From Phallusia mammillata (taxonomy: Eukaryota), in NCBI GenBank assembly GCA_965637545.1, contig OZ281499.1, forward strand, positions 10,044,001-10,108,000: a DNA stretch of 64,000 nucleotides, written 5' to 3'. The translations under genes were made by a program, and so were the position numbers. The notes beneath the pieces were generated by a model, which was given only the letters and a program-made list of their open reading frames with translations, had not been told where the DNA came from and did not search any database. Below are positions 1 to 14,406 of the stretch, piece by piece. The number at the start of each line of letters is the position of its first letter. Position 1 is the first letter of the stretch.

Positions 1-196
1 ATATATTATTGGTTTGTTTTATTCCATCTGAACCTAATAAGCGACTATACCGACCAAGAAAACTAATTCGGCGAAATGTAACTGCAACAAACTTGCTTTA
101 TTACTCTTTTATTTGCTGTACCTGCGGTTGCATACCAAAACACACTATGCATAACATAAACAACGATTTCGTTTTCTTCAACAAACTAGGGAGCTT

Positions 197-1840
197 TTAT
201 CCTCTGAGGTGATCTAAAACAAGATTCAAACCATTAAATTGAAAAATGCTGATTAAAATTATTACAGTGCGCAAGCATGTACAAACGTACAAAAATTGCT
301 GAGCTTAATTGTAAAAAAATTGTAGATTATATTTTAGATTTGTCAAGTGTACTTACCACGAAGGATATTTTCCATTGCTTCTTCAAGCTTCCAAGTTTCA
401 AACATGTTCTTCATATTATCCCATGGAATTTTTACACTGCAAACACATATTAGCATTCAACTTTTTAAAACCAGCAAAAATCACCGAAATTAAGTCAAAG
501 TTGGTCCACTCAAACATCGAGAAACCCAGTGTTAGGATAACTGTGTGAATGTTGTGAAAAAAGGAAAAAAAAAAAATTTCGTTTCATTAGAATAAAAGGA
601 TGTAAAGAATATTTGTCTCTGTATGATTTGGAAATCATGTTTTTTTGAATAATGTTTTATAATTATAAATATCAAAGATGTTGAAGAAAACCCGATAAGT
701 TTGGCCACAACAGAGTTGTGATTCGGCTGATAAGTTATATTTGTTAATTATTTGCTGGAGCCAAGTCAAACTGCAACTGATAACAGCATAAAAAATAACA
801 AAGAATTATTAAACAGGAATTCCGACTAATTTCTGGGATTATTTCAGTAACATCTGCTTTGAAAATCCTGATACGGAAACTGTTGAGACCAAACGTGGTG
901 GAAGTGGTTAGTATTGCAAAAAAAATGGCTGCTGAATATGATTTAATGTTTGGTATAAGTATAAAAATATAAAAAACCAAATATAGAAAAAATGATTTGC
1001 TTTTCAAACATTTTGTTAACCCTCTACTGGATCAGAAAATGCTAGAAGACTTGTTTACATTATTTACCGACGTCCTCCATCAAAAAAACAAAAATGCAAA
1101 GACAATAGAATTTGTATATTGACTATTTACTAACGTCTAAAACACAAGGACGCGACCTTATTTTAACACTTTCGTGTCGTATATTTGCAAATATATCTGC
1201 AAATTACGATTTGCCGAGGAGATCATGCTTCTTCAAGCACAACTGTGCAAATGTATTAAATGTGCATGCCAGGACCACAAAAAAATAACTCATTATAAAA
1301 CAAGTTAGACTAGTAAGTCGGGCCGGGCTTTTGGAGATTTAAGTTCGAGCCGGGTTCGGGCTTAGGTTTTGTTACACAAACTGGCTTTATTCGGATCTGA
1401 ATTTAAATTCTGTGTATTTTTTTCAGATAAAATTAGCCCACTAAGTATATAGTTGCTGGACTTCACCGAATGCCCAACAGCCCTAAAACGCCATGTTTAT
1501 TTAAGTATTCTGTCCAATGGTACGTTTTGTAGGCTGTTAAGCAGAGGCCTGTCAAACAAACTTTCGTGACTAAACGACTTCTGAACAACGATTCAGGTTG
1601 AAGCCGAGCTTCGGGCTTGTACTTTCGGATTGGGCTCAAATTTCGGGTCGGCTTACAACTTTGATTTAGACGCAACGATTTGCTACTTGCAAGTATCGTA
1701 AAAGTTTTTTTGCTTAAACGTTTGATTTAAACTACTTACCCCCCGTTGTTGCTGGTCTGGTGGAGGGGTTTTCGTCCATGGACTGGTGACAAGTTCATTA
1801 ACAGCAACGAAATCAGCACAAACGCAATACACCTGGTCAT
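197..1840 (-). CDS. Small secreted peptide precursor, copy A (65 aa; signal peptide plus helical peptide ending in Gly-stop, putative amidated peptide hormone/neuropeptide)
   Basis: Exons 1840-1740, 436-357, 213-197, all GT-AG with matching phases (2, then 1). Translation MTRCIAFVLISLLLMNLSPVHG-RKPLHQTSNNGGVKIPWDNMKNMFETWKLEEAMENILRDHLRG*. Same exon sizes, splice sites and phases recur in copy B. Confidence 0.78.
1310..1663. mobile_element. hAT-like MITE (CAGAGTTGTAAG / GGCCCGA-rich family), degenerate, in intron 1 of peptide gene A
   Basis: GTAAGTCGGGCCGGG at about 1314 and GTCGGCTTACAACTTTG at about 1647-1663; flanks AGTTAGAC/ATTTAGAC resemble a decayed 8-bp TSD; same family as 11939-12210 and 48716-49106. 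Confidence 0.65.
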
Positions 1841-2139
1841 TTTTGGCTTCTAAAATAACAAAGAGCCTGTTTTAGAAACATAAAGCTGCTACTACAAGCC
1901 ATGACTAAACTTTAATTTGCACATTAAACCAACTTCCACTTATCAATCTGGTAAAATAATTGAGCTAACTAGTTTCTTCAAAATACACCACGATTTTAAA
2001 ATAGACAGCAACTATAAAAAGCAATTTAAAACGTTTAATTCCTTGAACTTCGACGTCGCAGCTGAAAGTCAATACGGCTCATTTTAAGGAAGTGACAAAA
2101 AAAGGCAATCAAAACTTCCTTCCACATTCTAATAAGCTC

Positions 2140-2520
2140 AAATCCCACCGCAAGCTAGATTTTTTAGCCTACGCCTTCCCATTTGGAAATGCTTGGTTAT
2201 ACCGGCTGATTCGATATATTACGCCTTTACAGGGCCCATGATTTATATACGAGTATGCTGTTATCGCCGGTCTGCATAAACGCGTCAGGGCCAAAATTTT
2301 GTTAATCTTAATGGTCATATCTGGCGATCCCCTACTGACATGTGCAGCATACGAGGCAGGCAAACGGCTTGTTATTCGACGCGTTGCTCAGTTGGTAAAG
2401 CACTACTGGCAAAACTTATGTCGTCGGTTTAAAACCCGCCGCAGGCTATCTTGCCATGTGGAAAAGTCTGGTCACCGGCCGATTTGGTATGATATGCCTT
2501 CAGTGAGCCTGGTGTACTAT
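2140..2520 (+). mobile_element. Tandem fragments of a tRNA-derived SINE-like repeat
   Basis: A-box-like TGCTCAGTTGG at 2385-2395, B-box-like GGTTTAAAACC at 2426-2436, followed by the family body (GCAGGCTA...GCCTGGTGTACTAT); a second body fragment at 2140-2310. Confidence 0.75.
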
Positions 2521-2749
2521 AGTTTCTCGGTAGAGCATGTTTTTCGACTAATGTTTCATCGACACTGCAAGGCCAAAGAAGTTTAGAAAATACTTTGTGT
2601 TTGACTATAACAGATTCATCAAATACTTATAAAATTAGCAAACACTAAACTTCGTTGATTGTTTGTTGTATCCAAAATTAGGTCTCGTAAAGAGCAACCT
2701 TTGGCAGTAAAAATCTGTTTATTACAACTCTACAAGTAATAAGTTAAAT

Positions 2750-3700
2750 CCAGATGTGGGATTCAAATTATTGTCAAATTATTGTCAGTTGTATACACAG
2801 TCTAAACATATGCTCCAACAACATATTCTGCTTATGGCTTAATCTACTGTAGTATTAGTACTTTTGCAACACCTACTTGGTTTATCTGCAATAATGCGTG
2901 TCAGTACCCTAGCTAAATACGTGGTATCAAAAGCAGCACAGTTCTGTTGAAACTTGTAGTGACTTCGAGTGAGTTAGCTATTGCACCATACAGGTATTTG
3001 CGTCACCGCCACGAGAAGGAGGAACTGATTGTAAATCATGTGCGCGGTACCAATAGAGCTTTGTTTGAATTGCACCACAGATTTTCCTCAAACAATATAT
3101 ACATATATATATTGTTAATATAATTGCAGGTCTTTTCCAGACCATTTGGGCGGTAAATCTTGGTCATTTTTATTTCATTTAGTGTTTGACGATATTTTTT
3201 GTGTAAATGAAATAATAGTTTTTTTTGTACTTGGCAGTTATAGCTTATTTTCGCCATAGATGCTTCCCTACTGTTCTCGTCTGACCTATCGTGTTTTAGC
3301 ACTTCTTTTATTTCCGCATTACATTCATTTTTTAACGCCATTAGATTTACCGCCCAAATAGCCTAAAATCGCCCGGCGGGTTGAGCCATAGCTGAAAAAT
3401 CGTGTTTCATGACTTACGGGCCGCATCTGTCGCCAATTGCTGTGTACAGATAGATTACTAGATTCATAAGTAGCTCGGACAGTTGGAATTACTTAAACAC
3501 AAGGAATGGATACTTCGTTCCCTTTATTTCCATCTAGTGGTCGAACAAACTAGCGCTATCAAGCCCTTTTGCGATGTGGAGTTGTCATTACCCAGGAAAG
3601 TTACATTTTAGTAAATCTCGACCTGATTTTTTTAGATCATTATTTTAAGGTGTCTCTACAAAATGAAATGGAAGAAATGAAACAATAATTTGGGAAAAGC
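2750..3700. repeat. Diverged duplicate of about 7500-8520
   Basis: Shared blocks such as TTTTTAACGCCATTAGATTTACC (about 3327 and 8090), GCGCTATCAAGCCC and GGAAAGTTACATTTT (about 3555-3610 and 8338-8395), GGTGTCTCTACAAAATG (about 3649 and 8485). Confidence 0.85.
2839..3039 (-). CDS. Possible 2-exon gene for a 50-aa secreted peptide (weak)
   Basis: Exons 3039-2992 and 2943-2839 with a 48-nt GT-AG intron give MIYNQFLLLVAVTQIPNCAA-FDTTYLARVLTRIIADKPSRCCKSTNTTVD*. The paralogous block at about 7.6-7.75 kb keeps the ATG and donor context (MINEYVLVFM|GTATGG) but not the downstream ORF. Confidence 0.22.
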
Positions 3701-4512
3701 CTACATAGAAACCACTGTTATGCACCAGACAATGACTTGATCACTGCAAAATGATGCTTAAGTGCATCAGTTTCTCGCCCCCAAACAGCTATGCGCCTGA
3801 ATAACTACCTTACTTACTATGATGCTTGTATGCAATACTAAAGCAGTTTTTGTGTGTTGATTTTAGGTAGTTGCAGTTTTGGAATGTGATCTTTCATTTA
3901 GTATCATTGATGATTGAACGGATGATATGGTTTTTAGTGCATTTAGATTAAAAGTTACAGGCCCATATATGTCCTGCGGTTCATTATGATGTTAGCTTTA
4001 AGTTTAAGTAAAATAGAGTATGACCGGTTTCTTCAACTTAAAATATGGACATTATTAACCCTTTAGGTATAAGGCCAAATTTTTCTAGAAATCCTAGAAA
4101 TAGACATCCTAGAAATAAGAAACTTCCAAACTTATTTAGGTATAATCTCCAATGGATGTTTAGTATCAAACCTCTGTACAACTACGAAGCCAAATTTGAC
4201 CTGAAACTCTTTAAGGGTTTTTCAGTTATGCCCAACAGTTTTTTAAGGGGTCTTGTTCGCTGCAGGTACCTTATACATAAACCATAAGCCTGACGAGTGA
4301 GAAGTTGAAACTTTGCTTGCGTACACAGTTTCTCACAGTAAAGGCGTATTTCATAAGAACAACGAAACAAACTAACCTTCTTTATTGACTTACTGAAACA
4401 AAAAACAAATTTTAAATGGTATTGTAAAGTATCTTGATGAATAATTAATCTGTTTGAAGGGTAAAGTGTGATGATATCAAATCTATACATAAACAAAATA
4501 ACTCTAAAACAT

Positions 4513-5898
4513 TTAGAATGTATTGTAATCGTGGAAAAGTTCGATTGCAGTTAACAAAGAATCAAGATCGTCGAACGAGTACATGTTACGGATAGCTTCA
4601 AGTTGGCCAAGGACAATCTTCGTCGACATTTGCGCTTTAGGACACATATCTCCGTAAAACTGCAAGAAGTCATCCCAACCTCTACGCATGTATTCTCGGT
4701 AAAGGTGTTTAACCTTTAATAACAAATAAGTTCTTTTTAGGGAGTGACAAATATAATCGTTCTTAACATAAACAACTACTTACCGAGAAATAGTTGTGGC
4801 AGGCTAATTGCAATTCGGAGTATTCAGCAATTCCACGAAGTGACCTTACATCGTTTTCGAGAATCTAAGAACAATGCGCTCCATCGGTACTCGTTCATTT
4901 TCAAGTAATCGCTTGATATTTTGCAGGTTTGGACACATTATAGAATAAAACTGATCAAAAATTATGTAGTAGCTTCTTTGTATTATGTATGTTTGTATCT
5001 ACATTGCAATACATTTTAAAACCAAGAAGGTGAAATGGTTAGCCTAAGAATATTGCAAGCCATGACTCTTATTCTGTTTATTTCTGTATTTGAGATTAAA
5101 GGAAAAATAATCATCATGAAACTATACCATTAGTTCTGCCTTAACATTTAGACTTACTAAGACGTTAATGATACTGTAGACATCATCACGATTAATTTTC
5201 AGTCGATACCACGATTGAGGGCGACCCGTTGGTTTCTGAAAAATAGACACAAATATATCTGTGAATTGTGACTCTATTTACAAAGAAATATGACTCAACT
5301 GTTTTGTTTAAAAATACTTAAATTACCAACAATGACGTGTTTACGTTAACATAAAAAAGTTCAAATCTTTGTTAAAAGTAAAACATTGCGCACTTTTCAA
5401 ATTAGTCGGGCTCTGCACAAAATGACAACTTTAGTAATTGATCAAAAGCATCAACAGCATGGCTTAAACATACGATCACTGTTTGCCTTTTTAACTACAA
5501 TACAGTAAAACCAATGGACGATAAAATCCTTCAGAATCAGTCGGTTCAAATAAAGGAATATATATTTCGCCTATGTGGCATCATCAGTTTCTGGAAATCG
5601 AAGGATTTTATCGTCCATTGATTTCATCTTCCATTGGTTTTACTGTGTGTTGGGGTTCTGAACGTATGTATTCTGTGTTTACCTGATAACCATTGCTTTT
5701 CACCTGAGTGGATCCAAATGTCGTCAAGCTGTAGGTCGGCATCTCTGAAGTCTGAAAATATCACAAAACCTAGAGGTGTTTTTAGCATTAAATTTGCAAA
5801 TTTTTAAATTAAATCTTGTGTAGATACCTTTTGCGATATTCTGGCCAAGATCAAAGTGGTTGTATAAACAGCGAAACAAGTTTGTTTATTGGGAGAAA
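4513..5898 (-). pseudogene. Multi-exon gene of unknown family, apparently damaged (or alternatively spliced around the lesions)
   Basis: Terminal exon 4713-4513 VKHLYREYMRRGWDDFLQFYGDMCPKAQ...HDYNTF*; penultimate exon 4950-4784 is 167 nt and needs +1 nt to join FYSIMCPNLQNIKRLLENERVPMERIVL to ILENDVRSLRGIAEYSELQLACHNYFS; candidate upstream GT-AG exons 5235-5210, 5751-5683 and 5898-5828 (last has an in-frame TAA in the compatible phase). Confidence 0.5.
5502..5646. repeat. Inverted repeat / hairpin element
   Basis: CAATGGACGATAAAATCCTTC (about 5512-5532) is the exact reverse complement of GAAGGATTTTATCGTCCATTG (5601-5621); ACAGTAAAACCAATGG also pairs with CCATTGGTTTTACTGT at about 5631-5646. 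Confidence 0.8.
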
Positions 5899-7499
5899 CT
5901 GGATATAAGAAAAAAATGATAAGAATATTAATAGGTTGCAGCAATCTATGACCACGACATTAACGAACTGCAAAATATAATGAAATTTAATGTCTTTAAT
6001 GAGACAAAATAACTACGCAACATTCAAAAAAACTTTTATTTCGTTCAGTTGGACAACTCCTTGAACAGATTTTTGTAAGCAGCTATCTGTTTTTATTAAC
6101 TAACTCTTTAAACTTTCTGATGGAAAAGTAGTGAATCTGCGCGACAAAAACAAACTGAACTGAACTCTTGGTATTAACTCTGAAAACTGATTATAATTGG
6201 AAAATTTACAATCAAAGAGTTACAAAATTCATATGAACGTGACTGAGATTTAATTTATAAATTAACGTAAGTCATGACAGCATTGTTCATAATGACATTA
6301 AGAGAAAACAAGTCGTTTTGGGTGCCAACGAGGTAATGAGTTTGTTGTATTATTGGAAAGTGATACCACATAACAATTATTTATTCGCACAAGAATATAG
6401 ATATTTTGAACTTTATTTAACATGCATGAGTTACTGTCTGATTTTCAATGTCGGACAGTGGGCTTTTATCTTGATAACAAATCACATGAATGTATTTTTT
6501 ACAATACATTGTTTATAGCAAAGACTGCAAAAAGAAAACATACCTTCAAACAATGTCTCATTTTATCCCGTTTCAAGTGACTTAAGCAATTTTACATCAA
6601 CATGACGTTACAATTAAATATCGATTTAGTCACTTGCACCATCAGACCAATATCGAGGATAAGCAAACGTCGAATAAAGGCTGCCCGACTGGGTAAAGTA
6701 AATATTACGTGATGTATGGTATGGTGACTCCCAACAACGACAATATTTACAAGAAAGTCGAACCTCTATTTATTGAAAAAAGTTGCGACAAGGTAAAGAT
6801 CAAAATATATACATGCTATGAGAGAACTGTTTGTCTTTGCTGACTTTTTTGTCCCAATCGAGAGTACGAACAAATTTATTGTTAGATCGTTATCAATCTC
6901 AGTTCATCCAAAAAAGTTTTAACTGATTTAGATTCTTTCTGCTACATTTCTAGGTCGCCGTTTTGTTTAACCGCAGATATCAATCGTGGAATAATCGCTT
7001 ATGTCAGAAAATCTGTTGGTGTTGTTATATTTTTGCTGTGTGGCGAAATTTTTAAACCAACTACAAATTATTGCATTCAGTTAATAAAATTCGACTGATG
7101 AGATTTGTCAACACCCTATTCAAAACCACTTTGCTGTGCAAAGGGGAAGCGCACCAGTGACGTAAATCCACAACAAATATGACCTGGACTTAATTGGTTT
7201 GTGTAAGTATTTTTAGGTAAATGACGTCACAACAAATGCTTAAAGCATTATAGTGTCACAATGCACAAAACGCCTTAGCTTGGAATGACCAATAAAACCG
7301 GATTACCATTTTTTGCATTTGTAGAAGTATGTGGCGAGTGGCAAACCGTTTTCAAAATTACCCATGTGCATTACATTCAAATATATTCTCTGGCCGTTTA
7401 ACAGGGTTGAAAAGCACAATATCGTAAGTCAGACCGATATATTAGAATTTTTATTGAAGTCTAACCCAACGCACATTCTCTAGAAGCATTTTAATATGA

Positions 7500-8520
7500 A
7501 ACAATTCTGTTAACTAAACAGTGTCAATTATAATTTACATGATCTAAAACATGTGCGCCAACCGAACATTTATTCTGCCTAAGGCTTTGTCTAGTATCTA
7601 GCATAGTATATTACTTTTGTAATGTCTCTGCTCAATTCTCCAGCCATGGTGTGCTGCCCTTACCATATGTAAACTTGTATTAAAAAAGTATAGGATATGT
7701 CGGTTTTCTATTGCGCCATACCATGAAAACCAGAACGTATTCGTTAATCATTTATTTACGCGCAAGTATCGGCATCGTTGAGGTTCTTTGTTTGAATTGC
7801 ACCACCGCTTTAAAACAAAATATGTTATGGCAGGTCTTGGCCAGAAATGGAAGATACCAAGTTGCCCAGATAAGTCCTTTTGTAATTTTATTAGTATTAT
7901 TTCCAATACTATTTGAACTGGTGCGTGATAATAGTTCAATGAAAGTTGACAATATTTTTTGCGGTAATGAAATTTTTTCTCTACTTGAGAGCCTGTAGCT
8001 CTTTTACATCATCTGTACAGATAGTTGATGACAAAAATCTGAATGTGCGTATTACTGAATCTTTTCGTCGATTTTAGCACTACATCTGATTTTTAACGCC
8101 ATTAGATTTACCTCCCCAAATATTCTAAAAGTCGTCCGGCGGGTGGCGCCACAGCTGAAATATATTTAAAAATAGCGATTTAATGACTTACATTACAAAT
8201 CTGCCACAGGATTGCTGTGCACGAATAAATTGTTAGTCTCAAAAGCAGTTTGGACGATTGGAATTACTTGAAATAGGAATGGATACTATTATACCCCAAA
8301 AACTGTTTATTTCCATCTAGGCCTCGCATAACCTCAAGCGCTATCAAGCCCCTTTCCGACGTGGAGTTGCCATCAACCTTGGAAAGTTACATTTTGGTAA
8401 ATCCCGTTCTAATATTTTGATCATAAAATCTTGTTTATTTTCGGTGTTGCGCACAGTAAATTATATGTTTAGGATTCATTTTTAGGTGTCTCTACAAAAT
8501 GGATTGAAAAAAACACACAA
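7500..8520. repeat. Diverged duplicate of about 2750-3700
   Basis: Same shared blocks as listed for 2750-3700, including conserved minus-strand GT/AG motifs. Confidence 0.85.
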
Positions 8521-8688
8521 ATAAATTTGTTTAAAGGCTAAAGTCTCTTTTGTGTTGCTTCAGCTTTTTGTTTTTATTTTTTTCCAATCAATTTTTTTAA
8601 AAACCTCTGTCATATGCTTTTTAAACGACTGTAAACACAAATGCCGACGGATAACTGCTTGACAAAAAAAGATGTCGAGTAACTAAGG

Positions 8689-8961
8689 CAGGGGTGGGCA
8701 ACCTGCGGCCCTTCATTAAAGCTTGTACTGGCAAACGAGTCTAATTGTTACATATTTTTGACCTGATTAATGCGCCTGATGTTAGTTTTCTGCGATCTGG
8801 CAAAATGTGGCTAGAATCAAATACGAATTATAATTACTTGTAGTTAGGCATATTTGGTAAGAAACAGAGCAAAATCACTTTGTGTGATGAACATGTGCGG
8901 CCCTCGATCCAATTTTGACATTTATAATTGGCCCTACAGTGACAAAGACTGCCCACCCCTG
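8689..8961. mobile_element. hAT-type MITE (CAGGGGTGGGCAA TIR family)
   Basis: CAGGGGTGGGCA...TGCCCACCCCTG termini; internal sequence is shared in reverse orientation with 37506-37823. Confidence 0.85.
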
Positions 8962-9931
8962 GGGTAAACTATAGATTGATGATGAACCTGCAATGTTTCC
9001 CTTTCTACTGTAAAAGTTTGCAAGGGATTCCTAAGCATTCCAGAAATTTTCTCAGTAAAATCTGCTTTGAAAATGCTAATACGGAAACGGATAGAAACAA
9101 ATGCCGTGGAAGAAGTAATTATTGCAGAATAATATAATGGCAGCTAAATATGATTTAGTAGAAGTATCGTGTTGTGTTAAGTATAAAAATTAAGACTTTC
9201 AAATAGCGGTACAACATGCTGCTTCTATTTTTTATAATCATTCTGTAGAAAACTGTTCCCAAATAAAGAAAAATACTTAACTGTTCCCAAAAAATACATT
9301 TCTATGTCACATGCAAAAAAGTCACTGAATGGTCCATACGTTTTTGTGCCCTTAAACAGATAAGCAAGGGTTAGTCTCCAAGCCTCTGCTGCTGGATAAG
9401 AAAATGTCAGACGTGTAACATCATTTATCAGGTTCGCCAATAAAAAATGTGTGTTGGTTGATTATTACAAATGTGACCAAAACCCGACTCGTAATTAGGT
9501 TGCCAATTACGCACTGTCCTTCGACCAGGGTACATTAGTATACCGTATCAAATGCGATAATAATTTGAGCAAATGTTGCAATAGTTGTTTACAAAATCAG
9601 CAGGTTTCGACCTGCTTGCTCAGGGCATACCTGTATTGCCAAACCATGCTTGAAATTTGTATTGTTCCTGTCGCAGTTAATTACCGTTATATTCTCGTCA
9701 TTCAAGAGCTCCGGAGGGTAATATAAATAAATTAAAATACATATAGTTGGTTTGTTTAATTCTAGCTAAATCTAGTTTCAAATTTTCAACAAATTCAACA
9801 CCCTTGCATCAAACTTGTTTTTTTAATTTTTTGTTTTATTTGATGTACCGATGATTTTGCTGTTGCATACCAAAACACACTATACATAACATAAACAACA
9901 ATTTCGTTTTCTCGAACAAACTAAAGAGCTT

Positions 9932-10941
9932 TTATCCTCTGAGGTGATCTAAAAAAAGATTCAAACTATTGAAATAAAAAATGCTGGTTAAAATTTATAC
10001 AGTGATAAGCACATACAAACGTACAAAAATTGCTAAGCCTAATTGTCGACGAAAGATCTAGATTGTATTTTAGATTTGTCAAGTGTACTTACCACGAAGG
10101 ATATTTTCCATTGCTTCTTCAAGCTTCCAAGTTTCAAACATGTTCTTCATATTATCCCATGGAATTTTTACACTGCAAAAACATATTAGCATTCAACCAT
10201 TTAAAACCAGCCAAAATCACTAAAATTACGTCAAAGTTAGTCCACTCAGACATCGAGAAACCCCCTCTTAGAATAACTGTGTGAATGTTGTGAAAAAAGT
10301 TTAAGTTTAAATAAAAACGCGTTTCGTTCCATAAGAATAAAACGATGTAAAGAATATTTGTATCTGTATGGTTTGGAAAGCATGTTTTTTGACTAATGTT
10401 TTATAATTATATGGAAGATCTTGATAATCGAATAACAAACCATTGCGGCCTGTCACTGCAAAGCAAAAAAAAAGTAAAAAAAATCCGATATGTTTGGCCA
10501 CAACAGAGTTTAGATTCGGCTAATAAGTTATATTTGTTAATTATTTGCTGGAGCCAAGTCAAACTGCAACTTATAACAGCTTACAACATAACGCATTATA
10601 AAAACGGAATTCCGACTAGTTTCTGGGATTATTTCAGTAACATCTACTTTGAAAATCCTAACACGGAAACTGTTGAGACCAAAACTTGGAGGAAGTGGCT
10701 TCTAAGCAACGATTCAGGTTGAGGCCGGGCTTCGGGCTTGTACTTTCGGGTTCGGGCTCAAATTTCAGTCCACAAACGCTTTGCTAATTGTAAGTATCGT
10801 TAAAGATTTTCTGCCTAAACGTATAATTCAAACTTCTTACCCCCCGTTGACGCTGGTTAACTTCGCGGGTGCTTCGCCATGGACTTTTGACAAGTTCATC
10901 AACAACATCGAAATCAGCAAAAACGGAATAAACCTGGTCAT
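9932..10941 (-). CDS. Small secreted peptide precursor, copy B (65 aa)
   Basis: Exons 10941-10841, 10172-10093, 9948-9932, GT-AG, phases 2 and 1. Translation MTRFIPFLLISMLLMNLSKVHG-EAPAKLTSVNGGVKIPWDNMKNMFETWKLEEAMENILRDHLRG*. Exons 2-3 are nucleotide-identical to copy A. Confidence 0.78.
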
Positions 10942-11204
10942 TTTTAAGAGCCTTCTTCAGAAATATATAAAGCTGCTACTACACGTAAGAGTCAAATTGT
11001 TAGTGAACTTTAATTTTACACATTAAACAACTCCCACTTGTCAATCTATTAAATTAGTTGAGCTAACTAGTTTCTTTACAATATAACCTACCACCATTTT
11101 AAAATAGGCAGCAACTTAAAAAAGCAATTCAAATCGTTAGCACATGCATACAATTAGTCTCCAATCTTTTTTTAGGAAGTGACAAAAAAGGCAATCAAAA
11201 CTTC

Positions 11205-12934: not shown

Positions 12935-14406
12935 ATTTAGGCAGTTTGCAAACAAAAATTTTTACTTTATTACTTACTGTCTGTGCCGACTTAAACTGCG
13001 TGCAGTGGGAAATCCCGCCAAAATAATCAGCAGCGCAGGCAAAATCACATAACCTGTAAGTCTATGCATTTCGTTTCGCTGCTTGAATACAAAACATTTT
13101 TTTGGTTGTACTGTAAACTACTATTCACAAATTTTGGGTTTTGTTGCCGTTAATGGCACAGACAGCACGACACTTTACAAAAACAACGGCATCTCTGTAA
13201 ATGAAACGATTCTTTGCGATGCACTTTTTCCGACACCAGCTACAAAAGACTAAAAGTATCTTTAGTTATCTGAGTTCTTTTGAAATTCGTGTTAACTGAG
13301 CAGAAGAAAATCTCTGCTGCATTCACAAACAATATACTTGCAATGGTCTTTAACGTACTCAAGCAGAGAGTTAGTTCGGGTCTGACTTTACATTTTAGGT
13401 TCGAAATTAGGGTTAGAACCCTATTGAAAACGGCTCTAAACTTTGGTTCGCAACTTAAACCAATATGAAATTACAACACGAGAGTAAAGTAAGTCCAATC
13501 TAAGCCTATATGTTGTTGAACCTGTCCTAAACCCTACCCGAATCTAGCTATACACCTACAACCTTAACTCAAGGATTTATACTACGAATTAATATAAAGG
13601 ACATTGCTTGCAATTTTGTGCGAATCTTCTTAACTTTGCATTTCTTTTAATTGTATGTTGAACCTAAACAAAAATATCTGGCCTGTTAGTTGTTGTAATG
13701 CAGGCATACAAGTCTCGACTAGCAGATAACAGAAGGGCAAATGAAATGGGTAAAATCATCAGTGAAGTTTCTTTGTCTTTCATTTAGCAAGAAAATTGGC
13801 GTCATACTATGGAATTACCATACTATTGTTTTCATTCGTTTTGAATCATTTCCTATTTGCGGTGTTTGTGTGGTTTTCAGCAGTAGGTGGCAAACCTTGC
13901 ATTTTATCAACAGGTTTCACAAACAACTAATTAAGGTAGTAATCATAATTCAGATGAGGATTGAAATTATTTTTTTTTATTGTTGCTCAGCGGTTTTAAT
14001 ATTTTTTAACGGAAACAACGAGGTTTAAAAAGCCAATATAACTCGTCTTACGAAAAAAGGCAATCCATCTTTGGTTAGCGACAAACATTTAATGGCGAGT
14101 CAACAGTTGGAGCGAAGTAGGTAATCTTTTTTTTCGGGGTCTCTTAATGATGCATTACGACCCTGATCATACCATTGTAAAACACAACCAGTGTTGTTCT
14201 ACTTTGTTTCCGATGACACACTACAAACACAATGGACAACAGTTATTTTCCGTTTCCCTGTCGGAAAGGCGACTAGTTCAATTAGATTAACGTGCGTTAA
14301 CCTGTTATGGCAGTTCGACAATAATCATTTTCTTGGGGTTGTGGTCAGTTGGTAAGGGCAACGCTGGTCACTACTTGTGCGTTTTGAGAACCGAGGCCCC
14401 ATAACT

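What the first reader, a model, noticed from the sequence alone, without database searches (positions are those of the whole stretch)
197..10941. Twin genes for an unrecognised, probably amidated secreted peptide with a frozen mature region
Seen: two 3-exon minus-strand genes (197-1840 and 9932-10941), invisible to the ORF track, each encode 65 aa: a signal peptide, an 11-aa variable spacer, then GVKIPWDNMKNMFETWKLEEAMENILRDHLRG-stop. Exon 1 differs at 23 of 101 nt (11 of 33 aa); coding exons 2 and 3 are identical at 97 of 97 nt. Established: a terminal Gly is the PAM amidation signal. The peptide is helical in pattern and about neutral in charge, unlike cationic ascidian antimicrobial peptides. 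Inference: this is a peptide hormone/neuropeptide pair. There is a weak likeness to CRF/urocortin peptides (IP-WDNM-KNMF-ETWK vs urocortin-3 VP-TNIM-NLLF-NIAK as recalled; Asn 8th from the amidated end; about 42 aa after the signal). Against it: 4 residues shorter between those anchors, no dibasic site before the conserved part, and the C-terminal hydrophobic positions do not match.
Basis: partly seen in the sequence, partly recalled or inferred. Interest (0 to 1): 0.8.

Follow-up and report, generated by a model that had tools for sequence, protein, structure and literature searches.

The report
Paired sea-squirt secreted-peptide genes
Two neighbouring tiny genes really do encode almost identical small secreted peptides, but they belong to a large gene family in this genome that is built like sea-squirt antimicrobial-peptide precursors; they are not relatives of the stress hormone CRF, and no transcript has been seen yet.

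Summary
There are two minus-strand three-exon genes. All introns are GT-AG. Exon 1 differs at 23 of 101 nt (11 of 33 aa). Exons 2+3 are identical at 97 of 97 nt, while the introns beside them differ by about 12% (Fisher p = 1e-5).

They are not an isolated twin pair. A genome-wide profile finds 9 exon-2 copies within 33 kb here. A further 18 or so related copies lie elsewhere on C6, C4 and C3. All share the layout: signal, variable middle that is often Lys/Arg-rich, N-G-G, exon junction, V-x-I-x-[W/Y]-D, acidic helix. The intron phases (2, then 1) match wherever exon 1 was modelled. The scan has noted this family before, 15.9 kb upstream (s1-388499), and its sister cluster 16.7 Mb away (s1-388444).

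The layout matches ascidian linear cationic antimicrobial-peptide (LCAMP, Ci-MAM-type) precursors. The sequence likeness to those was judged by eye only.

In this pair the middle is short and evolves about neutrally. Only the helical tail is constrained.

The CRF/hormone reading finds no support. There is no PF00473 or PDB match and no dibasic site, and the terminal Gly is not kept across paralogues.

No contig covered an exon in four likely RNA runs, and no outside relative was found.

The parts
1740..1840 (-). Copy A exon 1. ATG at 1840-1838. Signal peptide is codons 1-22 (1840-1775). The 11-codon spacer plus 2 nt of the junction Gly codon is 1774-1740.
   Evidence: the donor GTAAGT follows at 1739
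437..1739 (-). Copy A intron 1 (phase 2). It holds about 640 nt of extra sequence relative to copy B, including dispersed repeats.
   Evidence: repeat-like partial contig matches at 1345-1694
357..436 (-). Copy A exon 2: the conserved helical tail (26 whole codons, 435-358). Identical to copy B.
197..213 (-). Copy A exon 3 coding part, (D)HLRG plus TAA. Identical to copy B.
108..113 (-). Copy A AATAAA polyadenylation-type signal, about 85 nt after the stop (a second one at 102-97).
   Evidence: pattern only
1876..1884 (-). Copy A degenerate TATA-like element TTTATGTTT, 36-44 nt before the ATG.
   Evidence: pattern only; homologous to the TATATA of copy B and of the third Z-type copy
10841..10941 (-). 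Copy B exon 1: signal 10941-10876, spacer 10875-10841.
10093..10172 (-). Copy B exon 2: the conserved helical tail.
9932..9948 (-). Copy B exon 3 coding part, (D)HLRG plus TAA.
9835..9840 (-). Copy B AATAAA signal.
   Evidence: pattern only
10964..10969 (-). Copy B TATATA element, only 23-28 nt before the ATG.
   Evidence: pattern only

Best explanation
Copies A and B are two intact paralogues (the 'Z type') of a large superfamily of three-exon genes for roughly 60-85-aa secreted prepropeptides, found so far only in this genome. Every member has the same plan. Exon 1 encodes a signal peptide and a variable middle that ends in N-G-G. Exon 2 starts V-x-I-x-[W/Y]-D and continues as an acidic helix. 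Exon 3, which encodes 5 to 14 residues, finishes the tail. This is the plan described for ascidian linear cationic antimicrobial-peptide (LCAMP) precursors such as the Ciona Ci-MAM family: signal, cationic peptide, anionic helical proregion. In sister clusters the middle is strongly Lys/Arg-rich. In A and B it has shrunk to 11 residues, carries little charge and drifts about neutrally. Selection holds only the helical tail. The inferred pathway is: transcription from the minus strand; splicing at the stated junctions; signal-peptidase cut after His-Gly at residue 22; secretion of a 43-residue peptide. That peptide may be cut further before the conserved Asp, as ascidian LCAMP precursors are said to be. 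That cut would free a 26-residue helix whose final Gly could be amidated. Shown here: the gene anatomy, family membership, the selection pattern and the helix prediction. Inferred: expression, processing, amidation, and any defence or signalling role.
For: Anatomy and identity. Selection on the tail: 0/97 versus 75/609 in introns, p = 1e-5. As an internal control, the exon-1-less Z fragment is about as old by intron identity yet differs from A at 8/80 exon-2 sites plus a 3-nt indel, against 0/80 for B (p = 0.0065). Spacer: 14/35 nt differ, dN/dS about 1.2 for A-B. Family: 9 exon-2 copies at C6:10023671-10054171; 17-18 matches genome-wide with broader profiles, on C6 at 18.09, 18.39 and 26.85-26.91 Mb, on C4 at 6.84 Mb and on C3 at 8.65 Mb. 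Homology to the distant cluster: same phases, the same N-G-G | V-S-I-[PA]-W-D junction, and end-to-end BLASTP of the exon-2 peptides at E = 2e-4. Helix: AF2 residues 3-32, pLDDT 89-92 in the core. LCAMP plan and its cleavage before Asp: PMC7387483. Its Ci-MAM signal consensus (22 aa) matches the Z-type signal at M1, R3, I5, F7, L9 and S18 without gaps. Its second family's consensus starts M-N-K like the Y type. Several of its anionic helices start W-N-[EQ] and contain L-E-A-M-E-Q-like runs. All of these likenesses were read by eye.
Against: No transcript: none of four likely RNA runs from four studies has a contig on any exon. Those runs are small, their tissue or stage is unknown, and their RNA status is a guess. 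The kinship to the Ciona LCAMP families rests on short, compositionally biased segments read by eye. A and B lack the defining cationic amphipathic helix. Their tail is only weakly acidic (about -1 to -2 overall, -3 in the best 18-residue window). The tail's hydrophobic moment is no higher than in shuffles. Two word searches and a full HMM scan of 1.84 billion proteins found no relative, so nothing outside this genome anchors the family.
Confidence: 0.6

Rival explanations
1. One reading: the conserved 32 residues are a C-terminally amidated signalling peptide (hormone, neuropeptide or pheromone), possibly CRF/urocortin-like, that acts on a receptor.
For: Strong purifying selection on exactly this part. 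A predicted single helix of the length of class B ligands. Terminal Arg-Gly-stop in the Z and X types. Copper monooxygenase (PF01082) domains, the family that includes the amidating enzyme, are abundant in the genome. The payload-like middle has decayed, so the tail must matter in its own right.
Against: No CRF profile match at E<=10 on the peptides or at this locus genome-wide. No PDB hormone match. No dibasic site before the conserved part. The family is multi-copy and fast-diverging, whereas Ciona is reported to have one CRH-like gene. The terminal Gly is lost in the Y type and in distant-cluster members. The third Z copy has changed 18/80 exon-2 sites.
Confidence: 0.13
2. The usual propeptide logic holds. 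The conserved helical tail is only a carrier or proregion for sorting and processing. The released product is the N-terminal piece, about 17 residues up to the Trp before the conserved Asp, which is free to diversify.
For: This is the pattern of LCAMP-type precursors: conserved signal and proregion, variable product. The spacer differs at 40% of sites against about 20% in flanking DNA (p = 0.009). Distant-cluster paralogues carry Lys/Arg-rich middles in this position.
Against: In A and B the variable part is only about 6 residues and nearly uncharged (+3 and +1 for the whole piece, by my count). It contains Pro and Gly-Gly and shows dN/dS about 1 or below rather than clear positive selection. 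The X type has almost no middle at all. A carrier with nothing to carry would not be expected to stay perfectly conserved.
Confidence: 0.15
3. The exon identity is a by-product of recent short-tract gene conversion between A and B, and one or both copies are silent relics.
For: No transcript seen. The cluster holds pseudogenes and fragments: an X copy with an in-frame TGA, the exon-1-less Z fragment, and a stray exon 3. The perfect-identity run around exon 2 is 114 nt and extends 27 nt into intron 2. Copy A's TATA-like element is degenerate, and copy B's lies very close to the ATG.
Against: It would take two separate tracts that each happen to match an exon (114 nt and 29 nt), with 12-14% divergence directly beside them. 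Both reading frames, all eight splice sites and the polyadenylation-type signals are intact. The Z fragment shows what neutral decay of exon 2 looks like over a similar time.
Confidence: 0.08

Closest known systems
Ciona LCAMP precursors (Ci-MAM-A to -E, Ci-PAP-A, the KH.S921 family, Ci-META4/6), as tabulated in PMC7387483
   Same: Small size, no Cys after the signal, and the same order of parts: signal, variable middle, helical acidic C-terminal region. The signal is conserved within each family. There is no dibasic site at the boundary, and an aromatic residue followed by Asn/Asp (W-N-E/Q there, W/Y-D-N/S here) opens the tail. By eye, the Z-type signal resembles the Ci-MAM signal consensus and the Y-type signal resembles the second family's consensus.
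   Different: A and B have no cationic amphipathic helix: the middle is 11 residues and nearly neutral. Their tail is only weakly acidic. Sequence kinship was not tested by computation. Expression and activity are unknown.
Styelins and clavanins (Styela clava) and botryllin (Botryllus): ascidian haemocyte antimicrobial peptides
   Same: Prepropeptides with a C-terminal extension that is removed by cleavage before Asp (PMC7387483; PMC9966394). From my own knowledge, clavanins are amidated through a Gly that precedes the acidic extension.
   Different: No sequence similarity was found. Their product is a long cationic peptide, which is absent here.
Myticalins of mussels and frog dermaseptin-type precursors
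   Same: Tandemly expanded multigene families with a conserved signal and acidic region and a hypervariable product (PMC5577615 abstract; the frog case is from my own knowledge).
   Different: Unrelated lineages. In frogs the part order differs. Processing there uses dibasic sites.
CRF/urocortin/DH44 family (Pfam PF00473)
   Same: Length of the conserved part, helical prediction, and a possible amidated end.
   Different: No profile match, no dibasic processing site, and many copies instead of one gene. The recalled motif likeness is no better than chance by every test run.

Membership tests
CRF/urocortin/DH44 (PF00473) | Match to the family profile | tested here: not met
   hmmscan of the exon peptides of A, B and four paralogues at E<=10 found no family. 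A whole-genome scan with PF00473 does not pick up this locus; its best hit lies elsewhere (C5, 22.7 bits, with a TGA inside).
CRF/urocortin/DH44 (PF00473) | Mature peptide flanked by a dibasic or furin-type site and followed by Gly plus basic residues | tested here: not met
   The sequence shows no K/R pair between the signal and the conserved part. Gly is the very last residue.
CRF/urocortin/DH44 (PF00473) | Single conserved gene per invertebrate chordate genome | tested here: not met
   There are 9 local and about 18 further paralogous exon-2 copies, against one CRH-like gene reported in Ciona (PMC7406891).
CRF/urocortin/DH44 (PF00473) | Activates a class B GPCR | not testable with these tools
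   Needs a receptor assay.
Ascidian LCAMP precursors (Ci-MAM type) | N-terminal signal peptide, conserved within the family | tested here: met
   The first 22 residues have a basic n-region, a hydrophobic core of about 12 residues and V-H-G at -3 to -1. The signal differs at 13.6% of nt against 40% for the spacer. No SignalP run was available.
Ascidian LCAMP precursors (Ci-MAM type) | Cationic amphipathic helix between the signal and the tail | tested here: not met
   A and B have 11-residue middles with Pro and Gly-Gly. Net charge is +3 and +1 when counted up to the Trp. Lys/Arg-rich middles do occur in distant-cluster paralogues.
Ascidian LCAMP precursors (Ci-MAM type) | Anionic helical C-terminal region | tested here: inconclusive
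   The helix is predicted with high confidence. Net charge is only about -1 to -2 overall. It reaches -3, the paper's limit, only in the best 18-residue window, by my count. Distant-cluster tails are about -9.
Ascidian LCAMP precursors (Ci-MAM type) | Sequence homology to named members | tested here: inconclusive
   By-eye comparison only, with the segments printed in PMC7387483 Table 1 and its two signal consensus strings. The word searches and the HMM scan returned no relative.
Ascidian LCAMP precursors (Ci-MAM type) | Haemocyte or epithelial expression and antimicrobial activity | not testable with these tools
   No contig lay on any exon in four likely RNA runs. Activity needs synthesis and assay.
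C-terminally amidated peptides | Gly at the C-terminus of the processed peptide, and the amidating enzyme family present | tested here: met
   A and B end in Arg-Gly-stop. PF01082 domains are present in the genome.
C-terminally amidated peptides | The Gly is conserved among relatives | tested here: not met
   The Z and X types end R-G and one distant member ends K-G. The Y type ends R-V, and two distant members end R-K and D-V.

The most novel reading that the evidence does not exclude
In this pair a former proregion of an antimicrobial-peptide-type precursor has become the product. After the cationic payload decayed, the helical tail was kept unchanged in two copies because it now acts on its own as a secreted, possibly amidated, signalling or recognition peptide. 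This would be a traceable case of a peptide messenger born from a defence-gene carrier domain.
Probability: 0.15. Interest if true: 0.7.

Novelty: new variant of a known kind. Interest (0 to 1): 0.35.

Why it matters
If the family reading is right, this genome carries a large, unannotated set of tiny secreted-peptide genes. They follow the ascidian antimicrobial-precursor plan and are scattered over at least six loci. That is useful for annotation and for mining salt-tolerant peptides. The A/B pair is the instructive oddity: the usual payload has withered while the usual carrier is conserved perfectly. This turns the question of what the acidic tail does into an experiment, using synthetic tail and N-terminal pieces, in situ hybridisation and peptidomics. 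It also removes a tempting but unsupported claim of a new CRF-like hormone in a tunicate.

Tried and rejected
CRF likeness: Pfam at E<=10, a PF00473 genome scan and PDB sequence searches were all negative.

Outside relatives:
- Word search with profiles for 22-70 aa and 36-114 aa: blank.
- Full HMM scan of 1.84e9 representatives: one hit, P0001. It is a TTQLEH...VNG repeat protein that matches profile positions 10-19 five times, so I rejected it as spurious.
- ESM Atlas by features: no usable hit.
- Peptide words in 8.4 million papers: none.

Expression: four likely RNA runs were laid on window 1-2300 at 85% likeness. Only short repeat-like pieces inside intron 1 and upstream matched, with no exon and no joint.

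Haplotig artefact: rejected. There are no N runs. A-B similarity is confined to about 2 kb. The cluster shows many segmental duplications at 70-90% identity.

Amphipathic-helix idea: the hydrophobic moment is not above shuffles. The hydrophobic face switches sides near the second Trp.

Positive selection on the spacer: not shown, because dS is as high as dN.

NF-kB-type sites: none within 2 kb upstream of either gene, and the window count is at chance.

The bacterial promoter scan was irrelevant.

The Fedders et al. 2008 paper is not held.
Full report
**What is there**

Reading the minus strand confirms both gene models to the base. Copy A has exons 1840-1740, 436-357 and 213-197. Copy B has exons 10941-10841, 10172-10093 and 9948-9932. 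All four introns are GT...AG, with phase 2 and then phase 1. The exon lengths, 101+80+17 nt, give 65 codons plus TAA.

Exon-wise translation gives three parts:
- a 22-residue signal-like start (basic n-region, hydrophobic core, V-H-G at -3 to -1);
- an 11-residue spacer;
- an identical 26-codon exon-2 peptide.

Exon 3 reads (D)HLRG-stop in both copies. Exon 1 differs at 23/101 nt and 11/33 aa. Exons 2+3 differ at 0/97 nt.

I never joined the three exons into one protein. So no full-length query, signal-peptide predictor or exact-sequence look-up was run.

**Is the identity more than chance?**

I aligned the two loci piece by piece. The divergence between A and B is:

| Region | Sites differing | Percent |
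|---|---|---|
| 5' flank | 74/338 | 21.9% |
| 5' part of intron 1 | 22/141 | 15.6% |
| 3' part of intron 1 | 55/467 | 11.8% |
| Intron 2 | 20/142 | 14.1% |
| 3' UTR | 18/114 | 15.8% |
| Signal (exon 1) | 9/66 | 13.6% |
| Spacer (exon 1) | 14/35 | 40% |
| Exons 2+3 | 0/97 | 0% |

Zero of 97 against 75/609 intron sites gives Fisher p = 1e-5. Whole codons of exons 2 and 3 hold only about 15 synonymous sites, so P(no synonymous change) is 0.13. Protein-level purifying selection is enough to explain this. Nothing points to constraint on the nucleotides themselves.

The spacer is more diverged than the flanking DNA (p = 0.009). Its dS is as high as its dN, and dN/dS runs from about 1.2 down to 0.4 across the three Z-type pairs. 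It looks unconstrained rather than clearly driven.

**Not twins but a family**

A tblastn of the exon peptides over 124 kb, followed by reading of the hits, shows a cluster from C6:10022259 to C6:10054941. The window starts at C6:10044001. The members are:

- **Z type (minus strand).**
  - Copies A and B.
  - A third, intact copy at 10036529-10035070. Its exon 2 differs from A at 18/80 sites and it ends ...LLRG-stop.
  - An exon-2 fragment at 10030128-10030048 with no exon 1.
  - A stray exon 3 plus UTR near 10031700.
- **X type (plus strand).** One intact copy ends ...SRG-stop. One copy has an in-frame TGA in its signal. There are two lone signal exons.
- **Y type (plus strand).** Three copies. 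The middle begins K-R-L-V. They end ...ERV-stop, with no terminal Gly.

A profile of the exon-2 peptides finds exactly 9 copies in the whole 240-Mb assembly, all at this locus. Self-comparison shows repeated segmental duplications at 70-90% identity and no assembly gaps, so A and B are not haplotigs.

By intron identity the exon-1-less fragment is at least as close to A (86.8%) as B is (82.3%). Yet its exon 2 carries 8/80 changes and a 3-nt indel, against 0/80 for B (p = 0.0065). This is a useful internal control. It shows what neutral decay of exon 2 looks like over a similar time, and it shows that A and B have both been held by selection.

**A wider superfamily with a cationic middle and an acidic tail**

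I fetched it and confirmed the relationship. Its first exons encode a signal followed by a Lys/Arg-rich stretch that ends S-[IV]-N-G-G, with a phase-2 donor. Exon 2 starts V-S-I-[PA]-W-D-F-E-N-N-E-D-L-E-M-F-E-D-L-L-R with a phase-1 donor. Exon 3 again starts with the junction Asp and continues acidic.

BLASTP of A's exon-2 peptide against one of these aligns end to end, 11/26 identical, E = 2e-4 for the single comparison. Broader profiles find 17-18 exon-2 copies genome-wide:
- C6 at 10.02-10.05 Mb, 18.09 Mb, 18.39 Mb and 26.85-26.91 Mb;
- C4 at 6.84 Mb;
- C3 at 8.65 Mb.

The earlier follow-up on s1-388499 called this a single-locus family. That is true only of the narrow subfamily.

**Comparison with what is known**

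The plan of signal, variable and often cationic middle, and helical acidic tail is what PMC7387483 reports for almost all Ciona LCAMP precursors (Ci-MAM, Ci-PAP, Ci-META4/6 and uncharacterised genes). According to that paper:
- the signal peptide is conserved within each family;
- there is no basic processing motif;
- cleavage probably falls N-terminal to an acidic residue, as in styelins and clavanins.

By eye I see three likenesses:
- The paper's 22-residue Ci-MAM signal consensus matches the Z-type signal without gaps at M1, R3, I5, F7, L9 and S18, with conservative matches at six more defined positions.
- The consensus of its second family starts M-N-K, like the Y type.
- Several of its anionic helices open with W-N-[EQ] and carry runs such as L-E-A-M-E-Q, close to L-E-E-A-M-E-N here.

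These segments are short and compositionally biased, and I had no reference for the Ciona sequences. So I left the computed comparison out and treat the kinship as a lead of about even odds.

A and B do not meet the defining LCAMP feature, a cationic amphipathic helix. Their tail is only weakly acidic. AlphaFold2 predicts one helix over residues 3-32 of the 37-residue open frame that contains exon 2, with pLDDT 89-92 in the core. Its hydrophobic moment is not above that of shuffles.

**The hormone and CRF reading**

- Pfam finds nothing on any exon peptide at E<=10.
- PF00473 scanned over the genome does not hit this locus.
- No solved peptide matches at E<=10.
- There is no dibasic site.
- The terminal Gly is present in the Z type, the X type and one distant member. 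It is replaced in the Y type and in two distant members. The amidating-enzyme domain family is present in the genome.

Amidation of A and B therefore stays possible but is not a family trait.

**Expression and outside relatives**

Four likely RNA runs from four studies of the same organism label showed no contig on any exon. Only repeat-like scraps matched, in intron 1 and upstream. These runs are small and their tissue or stage is unknown, so this does not show silence.

Two word searches, a full HMM scan of 1.84 billion proteins, the ESM Atlas and a search of papers for the peptide words found no relative.

I could not search other tunicate genomes with these tools. A weak GH6-domain hit is consistent with a tunicate. 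I did not otherwise verify the organism.

**Verdict**

The CRF/neurohormone part has no support.

The pair is best read as a payload-poor variant within a large superfamily with the ascidian antimicrobial-precursor layout. The scan had already met this superfamily on neighbouring and distant DNA.

Noticed in passing
G000 C4:20.99-21.06 Mb, C6:4.02-4.06 Mb, C8:7.87-7.91 Mb, C3:19.06-19.09 Mb and others: The copper type II ascorbate-dependent monooxygenase domain (PF01082) gives 57 exon-level matches, clustered in several tandem arrays. That is far more than a single amidating-enzyme gene plus a DBH-like gene would give, so the family looks expanded in this genome.
   Followed up: no
L025:483-1049 (C6:26896483-26897049, minus strand): A distant-cluster member has a 189-codon open frame in which a long Lys/Pro/Ser repeat (units like K-K-S-S-P-T-K-S-F-P-T-K-S) runs straight into the W-D acidic tail. 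So the variable middle ranges from about 6 to more than 170 residues within one superfamily.
   Followed up: partly
L018 (C5:8187028-8187123, minus strand): The only place in the genome where the CRF profile PF00473 reaches its cut-off (22.7 bits, E = 0.035). The match contains a TGA and no convincing ORF was seen around it.
   Followed up: partly
C6:10022259 and C6:10039742 (plus strand; 21.7 kb and 4.3 kb before the window): Two lone signal-peptide exons with a phase-2 donor lie 0.4-1.2 kb upstream of X-type genes. They could be alternative first exons or relics of lost copies.
   Followed up: no
window 1345-1694 and 2141-2292: Short stretches in copy A's intron 1 and 5' flank match parts of contigs in all four runs laid, at under 90% likeness, and those contigs run on into unrelated sequence. 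This suggests a dispersed repeat that is present in transcripts or DNA elsewhere.
   Followed up: no
window 10030-10284 (plus strand): An 84-codon TTG-started open frame runs antisense across copy B's exon 2 and intron 2. Copy A has no counterpart of 70 aa or more. It is probably a chance frame.
   Followed up: partly
window 13007-13016: A perfect palindromic NF-kB-type decamer, GGGAAATCCC, lies about 2 kb upstream of copy B. The window-wide count of such sites is at chance level.
   Followed up: no
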